Shown: positions 1,246 through 22,601 of the stretch, one piece after another
Layout: each line of letters starts with the position of its first letter
Numbering within the stretch: position 1 is the stretch's first letter
IMG/VR virus record: IMGVR_UViG_3300042891_000711
Span: 62,001-126,000 of that record
DNA: 64,000 nt
Strand: one strand, 5' to 3'
The notes under the pieces: generated by a model
What the model was told of the DNA's origin: nothing
What the model saw: the letters and a program-made list of their open reading frames with translations, nothing else
Databases searched by the model: none
Made by a program: the position numbers and the translations under genes

Positions 1246-1269
1246 AAGCCCGCCGAGTGCGGGTTTTTT
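1246..1269 (+). terminator. intrinsic terminator
   Basis: AAGCCCGC-CGAGT-GCGGGTTT plus T-run after erpA. Confidence 0.85.
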
Positions 1270-1305
1270 ATTGACTAGACAAATTAAACAATAATAGTTT
1301 TAACA

Positions 1306-1311
1306 TAAATA
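1306..1311 (+). promoter_or_regulatory. TAAATA late-promoter-like motif for structural operon
   Basis: Core of T4 late promoter TATAAATA; recurs intergenically at 659, 10081, 18633, 21974, 25782, 27290, 28354, 32402, 38939, 41245, 46411, 52216, 56690. Confidence 0.7.
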
Positions 1312-1338
1312 CTTAAACAAGTATATTAGAGTGAAACT

Positions 1339-3291
1339 ATGACCATAACTACAGCACAATTTATTGCAATTAATACCGGACTTGTAGCAAATGACGGAAC
1401 CGGAGATGATTTACGCACAGCGTTTACTAAAGTAAATGATGCGTTTGCTAATATTGCAGATATTGGTTTCAATGCAGCAAATATCAGTGCCAGTGGTGCT
1501 ATCGAAGTAACCGGAAATGTAACTGCTGGAAATGTTAGTGCTACAAATTTATACGGTCTTATTCAGACCCCAACACAATCACAAATTACATCACTTGGCA
1601 CATTAACTGGTGCAAATATTAGTGGCGTCACACGTATTACAAATACTACTCAATCATTACAATTTAACAGCGGTGCATTAGTAATTGATGGTGGTGTTGG
1701 TATTGCTAAAGACGTATATATTCAAGGCAATTTGTATGTTGCTAATGCACTTGCAACTAGTGTAACAACCTTAGTATCGACTAGCCCGTTGGTATTTTTT
1801 GATACTGTTCCATCATATCCGTATAACTTTGACATTGGCTTCTTTGGAAGATTTACCGGTGGCGTTGGGAATTTAAGTCAGTTAACTGGCTTTGTGCGCA
1901 ATGATGCTGACGGTAAATGGAATTTATTTAGTAATGTAGCAAATGCTACAGTTACCACACAAATGTCATTGACCAATGCCAAATATGATACGTTAGTACT
2001 AGGTAATATCGAAATTAACTCACCTACACCAACTGCAATTACCAACGGTGGTACAACTGCTACTGGTAATATTGGTGCTAGTGGTGCAACATTTAACTAT
2101 GGTTATTTTACTAATCTAGTTGGAACACTACAAACAGCGACACAAAATAATATCACATCAGCAAGTGCATTGGCTACTGTTGGTACAATTACTTCCGGAA
2201 CATGGAGTGCTTCGTTTGGAAATGTAAGTGGTGCAAACTTAACTGTATTAACTGCAGGTAATTTGATAGGTACTATACCAAGTACAGTCATGAGCAATTC
2301 AACTGTACACGTTGGTACAACTGCAATTCCGTTAGATCGTGCAAGTGCTATACAAACATTAAGTGGTGTAAGCATCGATGGTAGTGCTGGATCTGTTGCT
2401 GCCAGCGCACTTACGGGCGCAGCATTGCCAACTGCGGTCGTAGGTTCGAACTTACAATCGGTGGGTACTCTCGGGTCATTAGCAGTAACTGGTAACATAA
2501 GAACAAACGGCACGTTAATAGCCAATGGTGCTGTAGCAAGTACATCAACCGCAACTGGAGCATTACTGGTAACAGGCGGAGTTGGTGTCACTGGTAATAT
2601 TAATGCGGCCGGTAGTGTAACTGCACCAACATTTATTGGTAATGTAACTGGCAACATAACTGGTAACATAACTGGTAATACCGCAGGTACGCATATAGGT
2701 GCAGTAGTAGGCAATGTAACTGGTAATGTAAGTGGGTCAGCGTTAACAGTAACACAAGCGGCACAATCAGCAATCACATCACTAGGAACATTAACGGGAT
2801 TAACCGTAAGTGGCACAATCGCTGCTAGTACAAACAATACCATTAATATAGGTGCTGTAGGTACAACATTTGCCACAGTATTTGCTACTACATTTAGTGG
2901 TGTATCAACTACAGCAAGATATGCTGACTTAGCAGAAAATTATCTAAGTGACTCTAAATACGAAGCTGGCACGGTAGTAGTATTTGGTGGCGATAAAGAA
3001 ATTACAACTACACAATTATTTGCCGATACTGCCGTAGCTGGAGTTATATCAACTAACCCTGCATATTTGATGAACGATGCATTAGATGGGCAGCCAGTGG
3101 CATTACGCGGTCGTGTTCCAGTAAAAGTACAAGGTTTTACTAGAAAAGGTGATTTGTTAGTTACAGGTAATATTCCCGGTGTTGCAGTAAGTGTTGGCCG
3201 TGATGGCAAATACGGATATGCTGTATTTGCCAAAGCATTAGAAAATAAGACCACCACTGATGTTGGTGTTATCGAAGCAGTGATTATTTAA
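1339..3291 (+). CDS. tail fibre/baseplate-associated protein with probable C-terminal intramolecular chaperone domain
   Basis: N-terminal ANDGTGDDLRTAFTKVN (T4 gp9/gp10-like motif), GNITGNITGN and GALxVxGGVG repeats, C-terminal YADLAENY domain. Confidence 0.8.
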   Translation: MTITTAQFIAINTGLVANDGTGDDLRTAFTKVNDAFANIADIGFNAANISASGAIEVTGNVTAGNVSATNLYGLIQTPTQSQITSLGTLTGANISGVTRITNTTQSLQFNSGALVIDGGVGIAKDVYIQGNLYVANALATSVTTLVSTSPLVFFDTVPSYPYNFDIGFFGRFTGGVGNLSQLTGFVRNDADGKWNLFSNVANATVTTQMSLTNAKYDTLVLGNIEINSPTPTAITNGGTTATGNIGASGATFNYGYFTNLVGTLQTATQNNITSASALATVGTITSGTWSASFGNVSGANLTVLTAGNLIGTIPSTVMSNSTVHVGTTAIPLDRASAIQTLSGVSIDGSAGSVAASALTGAALPTAVVGSNLQSVGTLGSLAVTGNIRTNGTLIANGAVASTSTATGALLVTGGVGVTGNINAAGSVTAPTFIGNVTGNITGNITGNTAGTHIGAVVGNVTGNVSGSALTVTQAAQSAITSLGTLTGLTVSGTIAASTNNTINIGAVGTTFATVFATTFSGVSTTARYADLAENYLSDSKYEAGTVVVFGGDKEITTTQLFADTAVAGVISTNPAYLMNDALDGQPVALRGRVPVKVQGFTRKGDLLVTGNIPGVAVSVGRDGKYGYAVFAKALENKTTTDVGVIEAVII

Positions 3292-3299
3292 GGTATATT

Positions 3300-6200
3300 A
3301 TGGCATTACCAAAGTGGATTACTCCGGCAGGACAATTAGGAATCGTACCAGAAACTGAGTACTATGAATATAACTTGGATGCATACGATGCAACTGGTGG
3401 TACATTAGTTTATAGTCACATCTCAGGTAAGTTACCCTTAGGTATACAATTGATACCCACTGGTAAATTACAAGGTATTCCAATAAGTGAGTTAGGCGGC
3501 GACAGAAATGTCACCTATACATTTACCATCAGAGTAAAAAATTCTACCACAAACGGAGTGTCAGATAGAACATTTAATATTACAGTATCTAATGTTGCTC
3601 CCCCAATTATTATACCACGTGATGTTGATTTAGGTATATACTTCGATGGCACTATAGTTAATATACAATTAGAAGCAGTCGAATCTACCCCTGGCGCAAA
3701 TTTGATTTGGCGCAAAAGTAGTGGTGAATTGCCGCCGGGATTGTCCATTTCTGCGGCCGGATTAATATATGGATATATCGAACCAATCGTTGGGCCAGGT
3801 CCTGGTAGCGATCCAGGATGGGATCAAACTCCGTGGAATATACTTGGCTGGGATTTTTCATTAATAGCAATTAGTAAAGCATTTACTTTCACCGTGGAAG
3901 TTTCTGATGGTGTTAACTACGATGCAACTCCATACAGAATATTAATAGTACCACAGGATGCACTTCAAGCAGATGCTACTACAATTACAACAGATACCAC
4001 AGAAAGTGGTGGAGACGAACTTACCATTGATGTTGGTGCAAGACATGAACCAATTATAGTAACTACACAAGTCGAATTAGAACCACAGCGACAAAGCAGT
4101 TACTTTTCATTCCAAATTGTTGGATTAGATTTAAATGGTGATGTATTGCAGTATATATTGCCTGCTACCGAAACTGGCAAATTCGATGAAGAATTACTAG
4201 TCGGGCCAGAAAGTCCTTATATCAATTCAACTTTGATCGGCGGTAATTTATTTGTAGGTGTTAATTCAACTATTAATTCCACTGAGCCTGCATTATTATC
4301 AGGTGATGATATTAAGGTATTAAGTTTAACCAGCCCAGATGAATTAAATTGGTATAATGCCACCGTAAACAATTACATTAAATTAAGATTGACTGGTAAT
4401 AAAGTAATTACTGGTTCTGTTGGTAATTTTATCACACAGGCAATAAGCGGTGCCAACGCTACAATATCTAGTATTAGTACTACAACGGGTAGTATAGAAG
4501 TTGCAGGCAATGTTATTGTTGGTAGTTTAGAAATACGTGGTAATACCAACATAGGTACACTTTCAGTTTCAAACCAATTAATTACAGCAAATGTGGGCGA
4601 TTTTATTACGCAAGTTAGTGGATCTGCAAATGCCACAGTTCGAGCAAATGTAGTAAGTTCATTATCTGTACCAATTGAATTAACCTCAGGTGTATTTACT
4701 AATGGCTCCGAAAATATAAAAATTAATGGTAGTACCATTAATGCATATCCAGTATCTTCTACATTCGATGATATATTAGTCACTGCCAACATTGGCGATA
4801 TAATAACACAAACAAGTAGTGGTGCAACTGCTACTGTAACTGCAAATGTTGTATCTGTAGTCGAAATACCAGTAGTGTATACCAGCGGAACATTTACGTT
4901 TAATTCAGGCAATATACAAATTAATTCTACAAATATAAATGCGTATCCTCGTTTATTTACAGGAACCGTAAATCCAGTAGGAGTTACTGCTAATGTAGGC
5001 GATGTAATAACACAAACAAGTAGTGGTGCAACTGCTACTGTAACTGCAAATGTCGCATCAGCACTGGTTATCCCAGTAACGTTCACTTCGGGTATATTTA
5101 CTACAGGATCTGGCAATATCACAGTTGGTGCAACTAATGTACCAGCACACCCAACTAACATCGCGGCAGAAGCTGATGTGGGTATGGTATATAACAGTGC
5201 AAATAATTTTCTATTAGATTCAGCTGCCGCTTCGGCGATTGTATATATTAATTATGTTAGTACTGGGGCAACACCTACATCTGTAATCAGTGTTGGGGTA
5301 ACACTGGGATTGATATCAACTGAAGGCACTGTTGGATTTGATGAAGCTAAATTTGATCAAAGCCCGCTGGCTATTGCTGAAGGTATAACTTTAGATATAG
5401 ATTCTGGATGGTTAACTGGACGATTGCCAACTTTAACTGCCAACGAAACTAATTATCTATTTGAAGTGTTAGTGTACAAACGAGATTATCCTGCATACCA
5501 AACCAGTGGACTATTCACATTAACTGTGTTAGGCGATTTAAACAATAAAATTAACTGGATTACCCCAAGTGATTTGGGTACTATTGAGAATGGTCGTGTA
5601 AGTGATTTGTCTATTAATGCAGTATCCACCAAAGGTAAAAATGTACAATATTCATTGACACCAGCATCTGCACATCGATTGCCACAGGGACTAAAACTTA
5701 TCCCTAGTGGACTAATATCTGGCAGAGTTAGTTTTGAATTGTTTAGTTTAGATCAAGGCACTACATTCTTGGATGGAACTATACTCGGCGATGCAACTAC
5801 AACATTTGATGCTACATATACATTCACTGTCACTGCTCGTGATTATGATAACAGTATCACAGCGGATCGTACATTTACTATTCGAGTACTTAATAGAAAT
5901 ACTATGCCATATGAAGATTTATATCTTAAATCTCTGTCATCAAAAGAACAACGTGCGCAATTTACATCAATTATGCGCAACACATCTATATTTCCGCCAA
6001 ATCTAATATATCGTAATGATGATCCATATTTTGGCCTGGCGGATACTATAAAAACATTATTTTTACCAGGATTGAATCCAAGTTTATTATCAGAATATGC
6101 GGCGGCGGTATCGACTAACCACTACGAAAAAAGAATTACATTGGGTAATGTAAAAACAGCAGTTGCTCGAGATAGTAACTTTAATATCAAATATGAAGTT

Positions 6201-7310
6201 GTGTATTTAGAAGTGACTGATGATAATACAAATGCAGATGGCCAAGGGCCAGCAGATATACAATTTCCGGCCATGGCCACTCCGTATTATGATTATGAAG
6301 GAAATACTTACACTACTGCATACCCAAATTCTTTCAGTAATATGAAAGATGTTACTGTTTCGGCATTGGGATATGCTAATAAAGGGGCATTGCCTGACTG
6401 GATGACCAGTAGACAAGCAAATGGTTTCATACTTGGATTTACTCGTGCAGTAGTACTTGCGTACACTGTACCAGGTGCAAGTAGTTTAATTGCTTATAGA
6501 TTTGCGCAACAAGACTTTAATGTCAACGAAATTGACTTTACCGTTGATAGATATCAAGTTGATAATATATACACGGCTAATTACGATATTACTGCTGGTG
6601 CATTTATTACCAGTAGAGAAACAACCTTTGACCGTTATCCTGGATTATCCAGTGTGTTTGTGGCCACTGGCACAGTTGATTATGCTGTGAGTATATCATA
6701 TGAAAGTATCAACAATCGTGCAAAATCATCTATTATTAGTCTTGGTGGTTTAGATGGTATTAAGTCCTTCAAAGATGGTGAAACACTAGTATTTGCACGC
6801 CAAGAATTTAGACAAGATCAAAACGATATCGGTGATTACAACCAAGGGTGGAATGATGTTGCTACAGTGTGGGGCGGAGATTCTTGGGATTATGATAATA
6901 ACACAGCTACCTTGATAGATGATCTAGGATGGGATGCCGCTAGCGCAGTCCCTGGATATAGAGAAAATAATCTTGATCCAACGGTAGATAACGAACGTAT
7001 CGGCATATGGCGTATTAACATCGCAACTGATGGTATGGTTACCTTAACCTACCTACAAGAAGTATCATTCTATAATAAATTATACGTGAGAAATGGTTAC
7101 ACCTACGGTGCAACTAATATCTACTATGATCCAGTTATCAAACCAGGTAATTTAATACCAAATTACAGTATTATACCAGAAGAAGTAAAAATATTATCCA
7201 CACAATTTGACGGAAATGGTACACGTTTCTACAGCTATCGAGATAGTTATACTATACCTGAAGCCGGAGATAAATACATTAAATTTAGTAAACTCGGAGT
7301 ATTTAATTAA
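3300..7310 (+). CDS. large virion structural protein with putative Ig-like domains (baseplate/tail)
   Basis: Repeated LPxGL...G.ISG...YTFTV Ig-like motifs and internal ANVGDxITQ repeats; structural operon context. Confidence 0.75.
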   Translation: MALPKWITPAGQLGIVPETEYYEYNLDAYDATGGTLVYSHISGKLPLGIQLIPTGKLQGIPISELGGDRNVTYTFTIRVKNSTTNGVSDRTFNITVSNVAPPIIIPRDVDLGIYFDGTIVNIQLEAVESTPGANLIWRKSSGELPPGLSISAAGLIYGYIEPIVGPGPGSDPGWDQTPWNILGWDFSLIAISKAFTFTVEVSDGVNYDATPYRILIVPQDALQADATTITTDTTESGGDELTIDVGARHEPIIVTTQVELEPQRQSSYFSFQIVGLDLNGDVLQYILPATETGKFDEELLVGPESPYINSTLIGGNLFVGVNSTINSTEPALLSGDDIKVLSLTSPDELNWYNATVNNYIKLRLTGNKVITGSVGNFITQAISGANATISSISTTTGSIEVAGNVIVGSLEIRGNTNIGTLSVSNQLITANVGDFITQVSGSANATVRANVVSSLSVPIELTSGVFTNGSENIKINGSTINAYPVSSTFDDILVTANIGDIITQTSSGATATVTANVVSVVEIPVVYTSGTFTFNSGNIQINSTNINAYPRLFTGTVNPVGVTANVGDVITQTSSGATATVTANVASALVIPVTFTSGIFTTGSGNITVGATNVPAHPTNIAAEADVGMVYNSANNFLLDSAAASAIVYINYVSTGATPTSVISVGVTLGLISTEGTVGFDEAKFDQSPLAIAEGITLDIDSGWLTGRLPTLTANETNYLFEVLVYKRDYPAYQTSGLFTLTVLGDLNNKINWITPSDLGTIENGRVSDLSINAVSTKGKNVQYSLTPASAHRLPQGLKLIPSGLISGRVSFELFSLDQGTTFLDGTILGDATTTFDATYTFTVTARDYDNSITADRTFTIRVLNRNTMPYEDLYLKSLSSKEQRAQFTSIMRNTSIFPPNLIYRNDDPYFGLADTIKTLFLPGLNPSLLSEYAAAVSTNHYEKRITLGNVKTAVARDSNFNIKYEVVYLEVTDDNTNADGQGPADIQFPAMATPYYDYEGNTYTTAYPNSFSNMKDVTVSALGYANKGALPDWMTSRQANGFILGFTRAVVLAYTVPGASSLIAYRFAQQDFNVNEIDFTVDRYQVDNIYTANYDITAGAFITSRETTFDRYPGLSSVFVATGTVDYAVSISYESINNRAKSSIISLGGLDGIKSFKDGETLVFARQEFRQDQNDIGDYNQGWNDVATVWGGDSWDYDNNTATLIDDLGWDAASAVPGYRENNLDPTVDNERIGIWRINIATDGMVTLTYLQEVSFYNKLYVRNGYTYGATNIYYDPVIKPGNLIPNYSIIPEEVKILSTQFDGNGTRFYSYRDSYTIPEAGDKYIKFSKLGVFN
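4801..5053 (+). repeat. 49-bp exact direct repeat (4801-4849 and 5005-5053)
   Basis: TAATAACACAAACAAGTAGTGGTGCAACTGCTACTGTAACTGCAAATGT twice, 204 bp apart, in frame. Confidence 0.9.
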
Positions 7311-8828
7311 ATGTCATCAATTAACCCAAATAACATTAACGGAAGCTATCCTATTGCTGGTCAAGATAATGACTCGCAGGGATTTCGTGATAATTTCACA
7401 AACGTTAAAAACAACTTAACCTTTGCTAAGACAGAGATAGAAGATTTACAAACTAATGCTATTTTAAAAACTGGACTAGCAGGTACTACATTAAACAATG
7501 AAATGAATTATGCGCAGATTAAAGGTGCACAATTAATTAAGACAGTTGAAACAATCAAAGATTGGGCAACACAAACTTCAGTTGAAATTAGCTTTGCAGA
7601 TGGTCACTACCAAAAAGTAACTACCGGTGGCCCATTCACTATTAGTGCATTTACTGGTTGGCCAACAAGTCAATTATATGCTAAATTAAGACTTGAAATT
7701 TATATTTCTACTCCATTAACCGATACAGTAACATTGCCAAGTGCAGTTTCTGTAGGACTTACAAATATACAAGGAGCTGTTGGACAAACTATTACATTCC
7801 CAACTGCTGGTTCATATGTATTTGAATTCACAACATACAATGCAGGTACTACAATTACCATTAATGATTTAACCCGTAATTACAATATAGTATCGGGATC
7901 ATCGACATTTAGTACAATCCAAGTTAGTACATTGGCTAATATTACTAGCAATGTTATATCGACATCAACAACTACAGGTGCATTGAAAGTAGCTGGTGGT
8001 GCAGGTATTGTAGGTAATTTATATGTAGGCGGGGATCTTGTTGTTACTGGTGCATTAGTTGACCCAGCAAATATATTCGAAGTAACAGTAGATGATGATG
8101 GTTCTGGCGCGCAAGAAGTATTTTTTCTAAATGGTACAGAATTAAAAACTAATACTGGTACAGAATTTGGTCTACGTTTTTATCCCGGAAACACATATAG
8201 ATTTGATTTAAGTGATGCTACTAATTTACTTGCTCCATTAAGATTTTCCACTACTCCGGATACTGCGGTTCCTGCATCAATTACTCCGTATACTACGGGA
8301 GTAACATCGTCTGGCCTCTCAGGCAATGTAGGCGCTTATATACAAATAACCATTGAATCTGATACCCCTACGTTATATCTATACGGTGATGAAACTGGTA
8401 CTATGATGGATACTAGTTTAGTTGGTGCTGCGCTTCCTATAGGAAGTGGAATTGACGCAAATGGTGATTCAACTATCACTGGTGACTTTACTGTTACTGG
8501 TAATTTGACTGTTGGTGGTGCAAAAATTGACACCGGCTATCAATATAGTGCCGCAACGACTGGTTTTAACCAAACTGTTGGTGCTAGTGTATCGCGTGTA
8601 ATTTATAACCCAGCCGGCACATTAGCCAACGGTACATTAACTTTACCAGCAGGTAATGTTGAAGCTAAAGTTGTTACTGTATCAAGTACTGCTAATATCA
8701 CCGCATTCCAAGTATTACCGAGTGTAGGTACAACATTAGTACCAAGTGCCAACGTTACATTAACTGCTGGAACAAGTGTATCATACTTTTACCATGCATC
8801 AGAAACTAAATGGTATAAAATAGGTTAA
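7311..8828 (+). CDS. virion structural/tail protein
   Basis: N-terminal YPIAGQDNDSQGFRDNF, GALKVAGGAGIVGNLYVGG fibre repeat, Thr/Gly-rich. Confidence 0.7.
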   Translation: MSSINPNNINGSYPIAGQDNDSQGFRDNFTNVKNNLTFAKTEIEDLQTNAILKTGLAGTTLNNEMNYAQIKGAQLIKTVETIKDWATQTSVEISFADGHYQKVTTGGPFTISAFTGWPTSQLYAKLRLEIYISTPLTDTVTLPSAVSVGLTNIQGAVGQTITFPTAGSYVFEFTTYNAGTTITINDLTRNYNIVSGSSTFSTIQVSTLANITSNVISTSTTTGALKVAGGAGIVGNLYVGGDLVVTGALVDPANIFEVTVDDDGSGAQEVFFLNGTELKTNTGTEFGLRFYPGNTYRFDLSDATNLLAPLRFSTTPDTAVPASITPYTTGVTSSGLSGNVGAYIQITIESDTPTLYLYGDETGTMMDTSLVGAALPIGSGIDANGDSTITGDFTVTGNLTVGGAKIDTGYQYSAATTGFNQTVGASVSRVIYNPAGTLANGTLTLPAGNVEAKVVTVSSTANITAFQVLPSVGTTLVPSANVTLTAGTSVSYFYHASETKWYKIG

Positions 8829-8843
8829 TTTCTACCAAACCCA

Positions 8844-8872
8844 TTGACTCCTTAGCGATATTACTATATACT
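8844..8872 (+). promoter_or_regulatory. sigma70-type early promoter
   Basis: TTGACT-17 bp-TATACT. Confidence 0.8.
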
Positions 8873-8900
8873 AGTAGTATAACTAAGGAGTTTCTCATTT

Positions 8901-9335
8901 ATGCAAATTGATTTAAACAAATATTCAGACTTCGTAAAAGAAGTAACTAGCCAACCTAGTAACGACTTAACTACTTTTATGAATCGTTTAGATGACCTAG
9001 ATGGTAATTATGACCACGAAACACAATCACACGGTCCGGATGTTAATGTTTCTTTACTAATAACAGCATGCTTAGGACTAGCAGCAGAGTCCGGCGAGTT
9101 TTGCGAAATTCCAAAGAAAATGTTGTTTCAAGGTAAGCCACTTACAGAAGAAAATCTATTCCACATGAAACGTGAGCTTGGTGATATTATGTGGTATTGG
9201 GTAAATGCATGTCGTGCGTTGCGACTAGACCCTAATGATGTTGTTGCTGAAAATGTACGCAAATTAGAATCACGTTATCCTGGCGGAAGTTTTGATGCCT
9301 ACTATAGCGAGAATAGACAAGACGGAGACCTATAA
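8901..9335 (+). CDS. mazG: MazG-like nucleotide pyrophosphohydrolase
   Basis: GLAAESGEF...KRELGDIMWY...NVRKLESRYP. Confidence 0.88.
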   Translation: MQIDLNKYSDFVKEVTSQPSNDLTTFMNRLDDLDGNYDHETQSHGPDVNVSLLITACLGLAAESGEFCEIPKKMLFQGKPLTEENLFHMKRELGDIMWYWVNACRALRLDPNDVVAENVRKLESRYPGGSFDAYYSENRQDGDL

Positions 9336-9571
9336 TGCATCCACTTACACCAGACCTTTCGGGTTTATCAGATGATGAGCTACATAAAAAACGTGCCGAA
9401 TTGAGTAATCGTATGATGTTTGCTTATCGCATGGGTCATGGTGATATGATTGGTCAGATACAGATGGTCATGGGCGATTATGATATGGAAGTGCAACGCC
9501 GTAATCAAAAAATGCTCGACGATTTAGAAAAGAACAGCAAAACATTTAAAGATAAAATTGACATCAAATAA
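9335..9571 (+). CDS. hypothetical protein
   Basis: Coupled via TAATG overlaps. Confidence 0.7.
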   Translation: MHPLTPDLSGLSDDELHKKRAELSNRMMFAYRMGHGDMIGQIQMVMGDYDMEVQRRNQKMLDDLEKNSKTFKDKIDIK

Positions 9572-10083
9572 TGAAATACGATGAATATGGACAGGGTTAT
9601 ACAAACAGTACTGAATTGTGTGACCTACTGTATACCAAACCTGATTTAAATATTAACTTATTTCAAGTTGAAGATCCTCTTGAGTTTAATGCTAGTGTCG
9701 ATGCCTTGCATGCCGAAATAAACAAACTAGGCTTATACACTAGTAAGCGTATGCCTATAGACAAATATGATGATGCTATGCAGTCGCAATGGCGCATGCC
9801 CGATGAATATAAAGAATTAGACATTGCGGAATATATTTTAAGTTTGTGTTGTGAAGAGTACGAATTACAGCGTGTGGCACAAGAGTTACTACTATATCAA
9901 GAGCGTGATTTGTTTAACTTATTACGTTACTTGAAATATTTAGTAGATACACTACGTAAAAATAATTTAGTTTGGGGGGTTGGACGTGGATCAAGTGTAG
10001 CAAGTTATGTATTGTTCTTATTGGGCGTACATAAAATTAATTCCTTACATTATCAACTTGACATCACCGAATTCTTAAAGTAA
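9571..10083 (+). CDS. stand-alone DNA polymerase III alpha (DnaE) fragment
   Basis: RVAQELLLY...WGVGRGSSVASYVLFLLGVHKINS matches the DnaE GRGS region; only 170 aa. Confidence 0.8.
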   Translation: MKYDEYGQGYTNSTELCDLLYTKPDLNINLFQVEDPLEFNASVDALHAEINKLGLYTSKRMPIDKYDDAMQSQWRMPDEYKELDIAEYILSLCCEEYELQRVAQELLLYQERDLFNLLRYLKYLVDTLRKNNLVWGVGRGSSVASYVLFLLGVHKINSLHYQLDITEFLK

Positions 10084-22529: not shown

Positions 22530-22553
22530 CCACAGGTAATTTCGATAGTAAAT

Positions 22554-22594
22554 AAAAAGGAGAGCTTGACAATTCTCCTTTTTTCACATACAAT
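22554..22594 (+). promoter_or_regulatory. terminator hairpin overlapping sigma70 promoter
   Basis: AAAAAGGAGA...TCTCCTTTTT hairpin with TTGACA (22566) in its loop, 17 bp, TACAAT (22589). Confidence 0.75.
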
Positions 22595-22601
22595 AACTAC
22601 T

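What the first reader, a model, noticed from the sequence alone, without database searches (positions are those of the whole stretch)
8844..8903. RBS-sequestering hairpin wrapped around an early promoter
Seen: ACTCCTTAG (8847-8855) pairs with CTAAGGAGT (8883-8891, containing the mazG RBS), with inner stem ATATTACTA/TAGTAGTAT. The promoter TTGACT-17-TATACT would start near 8879, omitting the anti-SD arm. Established: T4 silences some late genes (e, soc) on early read-through RNA with such hairpins. Inference: the mirror-image logic here, with mazG translated from the early transcript and silenced on late read-through from the tail operon.
Basis: partly seen in the sequence, partly recalled or inferred. 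Interest (0 to 1): 0.6.

Follow-up and report, generated by a model that had tools for sequence, protein, structure and literature searches.

The report
Hairpin-wrapped early promoter before mazG
A conserved 47-base RNA hairpin between a late tail-fibre gene and the early mazG gene of an uncultured lake phage encloses a whole early promoter and hides the mazG ribosome-binding site, so it can form only on RNA coming from upstream, where it probably stops that RNA and silences whatever reads through.

Summary
Bases 8846-8892 fold into a two-tier hairpin (dG -22.7 kcal/mol, z about -6). The -35 box sits in its 5' base, the -10 box in its loop and the mazG Shine-Dalgarno (SD) sequence in its 3' base.

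It is not chance. I found 30 distinct versions in IMG/VR relatives. All keep TTGACTCC...GGAGT with a -10 box at 16-18 nt, while the stem bases between them co-vary (108 of 120 variable cells paired; shuffles 72 +/- 4). G.U pairs favour the sense strand, so the selected fold is in the RNA.

The predicted early start lies 11-17 nt past the 5' arm in every version, so only upstream-initiated RNA can fold. The upstream tail-fibre genes carry T4-type late promoters (NATAAATA).

First, the hairpin is always followed by a T-rich tract (T5-T7 in several clades), so it also looks like an intrinsic terminator. Second, it is not specific to mazG: relatives place the same cassette before other genes, and it marks a mosaic junction.

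The best reading is a PeSL-like terminator/early-promoter/RBS cassette that insulates the early block from late transcription. This is a new variant of known kinds. No transcript ends were mapped.

The parts
1304..1311 (+). T4-type late-promoter motif CATAAATA, about 34 nt before the 650-aa tail-fibre-like gene (1339-3291)
   Evidence: The motif is positionally enriched before virion genes.
7269..7276 (+). T4-type late-promoter motif GATAAATA, about 41 nt before the 505-aa tail-fibre-like gene. It is the nearest likely source of RNA that reads into the hairpin.
   Evidence: No terminator-like site was found between it and 8846 on the + strand.
7311..8828 (+). Tail-fibre-like late gene (505 aa). 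Its stop codon ends 17 nt before the hairpin base.
   Evidence: PHROG tail-fibre families; tblastn hits to phage tail-fibre and virion proteins; the stop-to-hairpin gap is 13-34 nt in 29 contexts.
8835..8839 (+). Conserved CCAAA, 4-5 nt upstream of the -35 box. This is the position of a proximal UP-element A-tract (inference).
   Evidence: Alignment A1; used as an anchor in the pattern search.
8844..8849 (+). -35 hexamer TTGACT. Bases 8846-8849 also form the base of the 5' arm of the hairpin.
   Evidence: Invariant in 30 variants, including the TT (8844-8845) that lies outside the stem.
8846..8855 (+). 5' outer arm (anti-SD arm, GACUCCUUAG)
   Evidence: There is covariation at the four variable pairs.
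8858..8866 (+). 5' inner arm, which is the promoter spacer
   Evidence: The inner stems of relatives are unrelated in sequence but all pair.
8867..8872 (+). -10 hexamer TATACT. It occupies the apical loop (8867-8871) plus the first base of the 3' inner arm.
   Evidence: The -10 variants in relatives all keep A2 and T6, with spacers of 16-18 nt.
8872..8880 (+). 3' inner arm. The predicted early transcription start (about A8879, range 8878-8881) lies inside it.
   Evidence: The TSS is inferred from the usual 6-9 nt distance from the -10 box; it was not mapped.
8883..8892 (+). 3' outer arm, containing the mazG Shine-Dalgarno sequence AAGGAG (8885-8890)
   Evidence: The SD unpaired probability is 0.00 in the long leader and 0.37 in the promoter-initiated RNA. 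The residual pairing comes from a weak fold (dG -0.5 kcal/mol).
8892..8900 (+). T-rich tract TTCTCATTT. It serves as the SD-ATG spacer and as a candidate terminator U-tract.
   Evidence: By T content it ranks 5th of 110 SD spacers (0.64 against a mean of 0.29). The tract is T5-T7 in several relatives.
8901..9335 (+). mazG (144 aa, MazG-type nucleotide pyrophosphohydrolase). Its stop overlaps the start of the next gene (9335-9571), which in turn overlaps the gene at 9571-10083.
   Evidence: Pfam PF03819 at 1.5e-08; PHROG 229 at 3.2e-46; 55-56% identity to cyanomyovirus MazG; ORF coordinates.

Best explanation
This is a compact boundary cassette of the PeSL type (a composite terminator / early promoter / RBS element) in a distant T4-related lake phage. 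Its parts are nested rather than placed side by side.

Early in infection, host sigma-70-type RNA polymerase starts at about 8879 from TTGACT-17-TATACT. That RNA carries only the 3' arm, so its SD sequence is open and mazG and the coupled genes behind it are translated.

Late in infection, RNA started at the NATAAATA promoters of the tail-fibre genes runs into the cassette and transcribes both arms. The 19-bp, two-tier hairpin forms 17 nt past the tail-fibre stop codon. Together with the U-rich tract it terminates or attenuates a share of these transcripts and leaves them a stable 3' end. Any RNA that reads through keeps the mazG SD locked in a -22.7 kcal/mol helix and is not translated at that start.

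What is shown: the fold, its conservation and covariation, the sense-strand bias, the nesting geometry, and the promoter and late-motif conservation.

What is inferred: the TSS position, the termination efficiency, the existence and amount of read-through, and the size of the translational block.
For: - Fold and statistics.
- Relatives: 13 variants were found through MazG and 30 distinct cores in all after a pattern search. All fold alike, with dG -18 to -27 and z -4 to -7.7.
- Outer-stem covariation on alignment A1: 6 pairs are invariant, fixed by the -35 box and the SD. The 4 variable pairs all show double changes (17 cells), and 0 of 500 shuffles reach the observed score.
- Across 30 cores, 108 of 120 variable cells pair, against 71.9 +/- 4.3 in shuffles and 0 of 2000 shuffles as high. 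At least 12 different complementary extensions occur.
- Strand bias: the sense strand is more stable in 26 of 30 cores (mean -20.4 against -17.0, Wilcoxon p = 4e-5), with 42 G.U pairs. This argues for RNA rather than a DNA operator.
- Promoter: the -35 box is invariant even outside the stem, the -10 box keeps A2 and T6, and spacers are 16-18 nt while the spacer sequence varies.
- The genome has about 40 consensus sigma-70-type promoters, clustered before small ORFs.
- Late context.
- U-tract.
- The stop-to-hairpin gap is never below 13 nt, so a terminating ribosome should not melt the hairpin (inference).
- Synteny of tail fibre, cassette and early block is kept although neighbouring proteins fall to 45-50% identity.
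- A second hairpin of unrelated sequence in the same genome (G000 141,659-141,714) wraps TTGACT-17-TATAAT and pairs the -35 box with the SD of an HD-phosphohydrolase gene (dG -23.2). It has no U-tract and is kept in relatives. SD occlusion by a promoter-wrapping hairpin therefore recurs without a terminator tail.
- In L022 and L121 the anti-SD arm lies in the promoter spacer instead of the -35 box, still upstream of the TSS.
- Precedents: the T4 genes e, soc, 49 and I-TevI (PMC3014915) and PeSLs (PMC2839356 and PMC4122927).
Against: - No transcript 5' or 3' ends, no termination measurement and no translation measurement exist. The host is unknown and there is no close cultured relative.
- The window's own U-tract is interrupted (UUCUCAUUU), and the stem is much longer and more A/U-rich than the canonical terminators of this genome. 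The simple terminator scan did not flag it.
- A rough d'Aubenton-Carafa-type score is negative for the window's clade and positive only for some relatives. The score also misjudged obvious terminators, so it is not calibrated.
- If termination is efficient, SD occlusion has little RNA to act on. If it is weak, the U-tract needs another explanation.
- In the closest relatives the -10 box is weak (TAAACT, TAAATT).
Confidence: 0.55

Rival explanations
1. Terminator only. The hairpin is simply the intrinsic terminator and 3'-end stabiliser of the late tail-fibre operon. It overlaps the -35 box and the SD only because the intergenic region is compact and GGAG/CUCC are handy G+C-rich stem bases in an A+T-rich genome. 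SD occlusion would then have no selected role.
For: - The T-rich tract after GGAGT is conserved in all 30 variants and reaches T5-T7 in several clades.
- The spacer is unusually T-rich for this genome.
- Other composite terminator/promoter sites exist in the window, at 22553-22600 and 1246-1327.
- L031 has a plain terminator before mazG.
- PeSL stem-loops are proven terminators (PMC2839356).
Against: - The genome does place canonical short G+C-rich terminators outside promoters when it needs them, so overlap is not forced.
- Every variant uses the SD as the 3' arm. When the anti-SD arm moves (L121, L022) it still pairs with the SD.
- The HD-phosphohydrolase hairpin has the same nesting but no U-tract.
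- Stems of 19-21 bp are far longer than termination needs.
Confidence: 0.2
2. Pure translational gate. Late transcripts read through freely to express downstream genes, and the hairpin exists only to keep mazG untranslated on them. This would be the mirror image of the T4 genes e and soc.
For: - The nesting geometry.
- The stability of the fold.
- The second, U-tract-free instance before another nucleotide hydrolase gene.
- No late-promoter motif lies between 8900 and 15700, so any late expression of downstream genes such as the cpn10 homologue would need read-through.
- A contig from an RNA library bridges the upstream gene, the cassette and mazG in a relative.
Against: - The conserved U-tract is left unexplained.
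- The cassette precedes other genes where mazG is absent, so the logic is not specific to mazG.
- The bridging contig may be DNA carried over in the RNA library.
Confidence: 0.15
3. DNA-level element. The inverted repeat would be an operator for a dimeric regulator of the early promoter, a cruciform, or chiefly a recombination site for swapping tail-fibre modules.
For: - The palindrome spans the promoter.
- The cassette is a sharp mosaic junction: L002 against L004 and the window is about 90% identical from -20 onward but about 52% upstream.
- PeSLs mediate such shuffling (PMC2839356, PMC4122927).
Against: - The arms co-vary instead of keeping a fixed half-site sequence.
- 42 G.U pairs and a significant sense-strand stability bias are not expected for a duplex-DNA site.
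- A recombination role can be a by-product of conservation and does not explain the pairing.
Confidence: 0.06
4. Chance complementarity between a -35 box ending in ACT followed by CC and a GGAGT Shine-Dalgarno sequence.
For: ACTCC and GGAGT are complementary by their nature, so a 5-bp core could arise without selection.
Against: z is about -6. There are 30 variants with compensatory changes, and their inner stems are unrelated in sequence yet always paired.
Confidence: 0.01

Closest known systems
Promoter-nested, RBS-occluding hairpins of the phage T4 genes e (lysozyme), soc, 49 and I-TevI
   Same: The SD and/or AUG is locked in a helix on transcripts that start upstream. A promoter lies inside the DNA that encodes the helix, so its own RNA lacks the 5' strand and is translated (PMC3014915). 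The geometry here is the same.
   Different: In T4 the nested promoter is a late one (TATAAATA) and the silent RNAs are early or middle. Here the nested promoter is of the sigma-70 early type and the incoming RNA is late, so the temporal polarity is inverted. Here the hairpin also carries a terminator-like U-tract, and the -35 hexamer itself supplies the anti-SD. The T4-polarity version also seems to exist in this genome, at G000 212,891-212,960.
PeSLs (promoter-early stem-loops), the composite terminator/early-promoter cassettes of T4-like phages RB49/phi1, PST/T4 and nt-1/KVP40
   Same: An intergenic cassette with an AT-rich upstream region, a sigma-70-like -35 and -10, a stem-loop that terminates or attenuates upstream transcription, and the SD and ATG at its 3' end. 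PeSLs sit at indel and replacement junctions (PMC2839356, PMC4122927). Here the cassette has all these parts and marks a mosaic junction.
   Different: PeSL stem-loops lie upstream of the promoter, between the -35 and -10 boxes, or over the -10 box, and they do not pair with the SD. Here the stem encloses the whole promoter and uses the SD as its 3' arm. PeSLs are many per genome and flank ORFans in hyperplastic regions. This genome has a single TTGACTCC copy plus one analogue. Mini-circle formation and terminator activity were not tested here.
Canonical intrinsic (Rho-independent) terminators
   Same: The stem base is G+C-rich (3 G-C pairs in the 5 basal pairs) and is followed at once by a U-rich tract, T5-T7 in several clades. 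The element sits right after the last gene of a late operon.
   Different: The stem has 19-21 pairs with internal loops and a mostly A/U upper half. In the window the U-tract is interrupted. A whole promoter is embedded, and the U-tract doubles as the SD-AUG spacer. The element was not flagged by the simple scan.

Membership tests
T4 e/soc/49/I-TevI-type promoter-nested RBS-occluding hairpin | The SD and/or start codon is sequestered in a stable helix on upstream-initiated RNA | tested here: met
   SD 8885-8890 lies inside the 3' arm. dG is -22.7 kcal/mol, and the SD unpaired probability in the long leader is 0.00. This is a computed fold only.
T4 e/soc/49/I-TevI-type promoter-nested RBS-occluding hairpin | A promoter lies within the helix-coding DNA, so its transcript lacks the 5' strand | tested here: met
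   The -35 box is in the 5' base and the -10 box in the loop. The predicted TSS is 11-17 nt past the 5' arm in 30 of 30 variants. The TSS is inferred, not mapped.
T4 e/soc/49/I-TevI-type promoter-nested RBS-occluding hairpin | The nested promoter is a late promoter (TATAAATA) and the silenced RNAs are early or middle | tested here: not met
   The nested promoter is TTGACT-17-TATACT. The late motifs lie upstream, at 1304-1311 and 7269-7276. The polarity is inverted.
T4 e/soc/49/I-TevI-type promoter-nested RBS-occluding hairpin | A measured drop in translation on the long transcript | not testable with these tools
   This needs reporter fusions or toeprinting.
PeSL (promoter-early stem-loop) cassette | A strong sigma-70-like early promoter with an A/T-rich upstream region, in an intergenic cassette that ends in the SD and ATG | tested here: met
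   CCAAA-N4-TTGACT-17-TATACT...AAGGAG-N10-ATG, conserved in 30 variants.
PeSL (promoter-early stem-loop) cassette | A stem-loop in the cassette acts as terminator or attenuator of upstream transcription | tested here: inconclusive
   A stable hairpin and a conserved T-rich tail are present. Termination was not measured, and the window's own tail is interrupted.
PeSL (promoter-early stem-loop) cassette | Many similar copies per genome, flanking ORFans in hyperplastic regions | tested here: not met
   There is one TTGACTCC cassette in the 218.9-kb genome plus one analogue of unrelated sequence. Other terminator/promoter composites exist but are not copies.
PeSL (promoter-early stem-loop) cassette | It sits at recombination, indel or replacement junctions | tested here: met
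   Identity falls from about 90% to about 52% at the 5' edge of the cassette between L002 and L004 or the window. The cassette precedes different genes in different relatives.
Intrinsic terminator | A G+C-rich stem followed directly by a run of U | tested here: inconclusive
   The basal pairs are A-U, C-G, U-A, C-G, C-G. The tail is UUCUCAUUU in the window and U5-U7 in L010, L026, L038, L071, L107 and L121. The scan did not flag it, and the ad hoc score was not calibrated.
Described RNA families (Rfam 15) | A match to any curated covariance model | tested here: not met
   No match with E up to 1 in 8600-9100.

The most novel reading that the evidence does not exclude
A widespread clade of uncultured freshwater T4-related phages uses a portable, roughly 60-nt 'promoter-gated translation' module. 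An early promoter is built into the two arms and loop of an SD-sequestering hairpin, so the first gene behind it can be translated only from that promoter and never from incoming late (or any upstream) transcription. This would be the temporal mirror image of the T4 e/soc switch, fused to a terminator. The two strongest cases in this genome guard nucleotide-hydrolysing enzymes (MazG and an HD phosphohydrolase), whose late synthesis might be harmful during DNA replication and packaging.
Probability: 0.4. Interest if true: 0.6.

Novelty: new variant of a known kind. Interest (0 to 1): 0.5.

Why it matters
The element shows how four signals can share about 60 nt and stay together over deep divergence: the end of a late operon, an early promoter, an RBS and a translational lock.

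It extends the T4 idea that 'promoter choice decides translatability' to the opposite temporal direction. It also extends PeSL-type cassettes to a large group of uncultured lake phages.

In practice it gives annotation rules for such genomes:
- the boundary between the late and early gene blocks;
- the early and late promoter motifs;
- the junction at which tail-fibre (host-range) modules are exchanged.

It also offers a naturally compact insulator design that can be tested in E. coli.

Tried and rejected
- Megablast of 8300-9600 against isolated phages gave no match. Blastn of the cassette gave only chance-level hits with E at or above 0.2. So no cultured phage has this element. The portal protein is only about 50% identical to those of Atu_ph07 and PA5oct-like phages, and the host remains unknown.\n- Rfam gave no match.\n- The simple terminator scan did not flag the site.\n- A d'Aubenton-Carafa-style score built with modern energies also scored obvious terminators of this genome negative, so I dropped it as evidence.\n- Reads: only Logan contigs were available. 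One contig from a metatranscriptome, belonging to an L002-like relative, bridges the upstream gene, the cassette and mazG. DNA carry-over cannot be excluded, and contigs show no transcript ends. The other five TTGACTCC sites lie in unrelated contexts without the hairpin.\n- A literature search of the open-access library for an early promoter nested in an SD-occluding hairpin found no precedent. That is not proof of absence.\n- I considered a mazG-specific explanation (keeping MazG off late). I demoted it because the cassette precedes other genes in relatives.\n- The large protein searches, structure prediction and complex prediction were not needed and were not run.

Full report
**What is there.** The window is bases 62,001-126,000 of a single 218.9-kb contig with 38% G+C. 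Near-identical DNA occurs in many lake-water metagenomes. No isolated phage is close at the DNA level. The portal protein is about 50% identical to those of Atu_ph07 and PA5oct-type myoviruses, and MazG is 55-56% identical to cyanomyovirus MazG.

The genes around the site all lie on the + strand:
- three tail-fibre-like genes (1339-3291, 3300-7310, 7311-8828);
- a 72-nt intergenic region;
- mazG (8901-9335; Pfam MazG at 1.5e-08, PHROG 229 at 3.2e-46);
- a 78-aa gene and a 170-aa gene, each overlapping the gene before it by one base;
- a Cpn10-like gene and clamp-loader genes.

**The observation.** The repeat finder gives arms 8847-8866 and 8872-8891, 20 nt long and 85% complementary. As RNA, 8846-8855 pairs with 8883-8892 and 8858-8866 pairs with 8872-8880. 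The dG is -22.7 kcal/mol, and none of 200 dinucleotide shuffles folds as well (z -5.75 and -6.52).

The -35 box TTGACT (8844-8849) runs into the 5' base of the stem, and the -10 box TATACT (8867-8872) fills the loop. The SD sequence AAGGAG (8885-8890) lies in the 3' base, and TTCTCATTT leads to the ATG. The leader is the third most stable of 272 in the genome. It is one of only two leaders below -20 kcal/mol among 18 strong promoter/SD/ORF units.

**It is conserved and it co-varies.** A MazG-based search of IMG/VR returned 80 loci. Wherever mazG follows a tail-fibre-like gene, the same architecture is present, in 13 distinct versions.

I then ran a pattern search anchored only on CCAAA-N4-5-TTGACTCC...GGAGT. 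After removing hits without a -10 box, this raised the count to 30 distinct cores. All of those tested fold alike, with dG from -18 to -27 and z from -4 to -7.7.

On alignment A1 the six basal pairs never vary, because they are the -35 box and the SD. All four variable pairs show double compensatory changes (17 cells), and 0 of 500 shuffles reach the observed score. Over the 30 cores, 108 of 120 variable cells pair, against 71.9 +/- 4.3 after shuffling partners. At least 12 different complementary extensions occur, among them TTAG/CTAA, TTGG/CCAA, TAGT/ACTA, TTTG/CAAA, TTGC/GCAA and TAAT/ATTA. The inner stems are unrelated in sequence between clades, yet they always pair.

The sense strand is the more stable one in 26 of 30 cores (p = 4e-5), and the stems hold 42 G.U pairs. 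Selection therefore acts on the + strand RNA, not on a duplex-DNA operator.

**The promoter is real by comparative criteria.** TTGACT is invariant, including the TT that lies outside the stem. The -10 box varies only among TATAAT, TATACT, TATAGT, TAAACT, TATTAT and TAAATT, and always keeps A2 and T6. Spacers are 16-18 nt long while their sequence changes freely.

The genome holds about 40 near-consensus promoters of this type, clustered before small ORFs. In all 30 cores the predicted start lies 11-17 nt beyond the last 5'-arm base. The promoter's own RNA therefore cannot form the hairpin. In the window that RNA has dG -0.5 kcal/mol.

**The incoming RNA is late.** NATAAATA occurs 42 times in the genome, and half of the sites lie 15-70 nt before gene starts. 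The genes behind them include the portal, baseplate wedge, baseplate hub and other virion proteins. Two such motifs precede tail-fibre genes, at 1304-1311 and 7269-7276. No terminator-like site lies between 7276 and the hairpin.

The gap between the upstream stop codon and the hairpin base is 17 nt here and 13-34 nt in 29 contexts. By the usual ribosome footprint (my inference), that is enough for the hairpin to escape a terminating ribosome.

1. GGAGT is always followed by a T-rich tract. T makes up 83% of the first 4 nt across the 30 cores, and the tract is T5-T7 in several clades. SD-ATG spacers in this genome average 29% T and 42% A, and the mazG spacer ranks 5th of 110 for T content. A stem base rich in G+C followed by a U-run is the anatomy of an intrinsic terminator.
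2. The cassette is not tied to mazG. In L135, L146, L105 and L123 it precedes the 78-aa gene. In L101 it precedes a 126-aa ORF. In L131 and L098 it sits after the cpn10 homologue.
3. It is a mosaic junction. L002 is about 90% identical to L004 and to the window from 20 nt upstream of the -35 box onward, and about 52% identical further upstream.

These three traits are those of PeSLs, the composite early-promoter/terminator cassettes of T4-like phages (PMC2839356, PMC4122927). The window also has plainer composites: a terminator with a -35 box in its loop at 22553-22585, and a terminator abutting promoters at 1246-1327.

**Why termination alone is not enough.** A second hairpin of unrelated sequence lies elsewhere in the same genome, at G000 141,659-141,714. 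It wraps TTGACT-17-TATAAT and pairs the -35 region with the SD of an HD-phosphohydrolase gene. Its dG is -23.2 kcal/mol and its z is -5.5. It has no U-tract, and relatives keep the arrangement.

In L121 and L022 the anti-SD arm has moved into the promoter spacer, yet it still pairs with the SD and still lies upstream of the start. The genome also uses short canonical terminators outside promoters, so the overlap is not forced by lack of space.

**Mechanism proposed (confidence 0.55).** Early in infection the nested promoter makes a short-leader mRNA with an open SD. Late in infection, tail-fibre transcripts fold the hairpin. A share of them terminates at the U-tract, and the rest carry a locked mazG SD. 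The cassette thus insulates the early block from late transcription at both the transcriptional and the translational level.

Direct evidence is lacking. The only transcript hint is one contig from an RNA library, belonging to an L002-like relative, that bridges the upstream gene, the cassette and mazG. This could be DNA carry-over.

**Comparison and novelty.** The element works like the T4 e/soc/49/I-TevI hairpins (PMC3014915), but with inverted temporal polarity and a sigma-70-type nested promoter, so it is not a member of that set. It resembles PeSLs in its parts and in its junctional position. It differs from them in topology (the stem encloses the promoter and uses the SD) and in copy number.

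I found no Rfam family for it and no precedent in the open-access literature searched. I rate it a new variant of known kinds, with interest 0.5: an elegant and well-supported architecture that still lacks experimental proof.

Noticed in passing
G000 212,891-212,960 (L082 about 1892-1961; outside the window): A near-perfect palindrome (dG -26 kcal/mol) holds two divergent late promoters (TATAAATA) and buries both start regions (CCATGG). The genes are a baseplate-hub-like gene on the minus strand and a tape-measure/lysin-like gene on the plus strand. This is the T4 e/soc topology with the usual polarity.
   Followed up: partly
G000 141,659-141,714 (L081 2660-2715; outside the window): A second promoter-wrapping, SD-sequestering hairpin lies before an HD-domain phosphohydrolase gene. 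Its dG is -23.2 kcal/mol, it has no U-tract, and relatives L084-L096 keep the arrangement. A late-promoter motif lies about 3 kb upstream on the same strand, at 138,586.
   Followed up: partly
window 22553-22600: A canonical terminator, AAAAAGGAGAGCTTGACAATTCTCCTTTTTT, carries a -35 TTGACA in its loop. TACAAT follows 17 nt later. This is a PeSL-like composite of the plainer kind.
   Followed up: no
window 1246-1327: The terminator GCCCGC...GCGGG plus T6 is followed directly by TTGACT and then by the late-promoter motif CATAAATA (1304-1311), just before the first tail-fibre-like gene.
   Followed up: no
L002/L003 against L004/L005 and the window, at the 5' edge of the cassette: The cassette and the downstream genes are identical or near-identical, but the C-terminal parts of the tail-fibre gene upstream are unrelated. 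Identity drops from about 90% to about 52% within 20 nt of the -35 box. The cassette therefore bounds an exchangeable tail-fibre (host-range) module.
   Followed up: partly
L022 and L121 (IMG/VR relatives): In these variants the anti-SD arm lies in the promoter spacer rather than in the -35 box. In L022, GACTCCTGTAGTA pairs with TACTACGGGAGT, followed by T7 and ATG.
   Followed up: no
window 9571-10083: A 170-aa ORF matches only the N-terminal NTPase region of DNA polymerase III alpha (Pfam PF07733, 2e-07; PHROG 11127 'DNA polymerase', 7e-44). It is conserved next to mazG in all relatives. Its role as a stand-alone small protein is unclear.
   Followed up: no
whole genome G000: The late-promoter consensus is NATAAATA rather than the strict TATAAATA. 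The strict form occurs only 13 times, fewer than composition predicts (about 37), and mostly lies before gene starts.
   Followed up: partly
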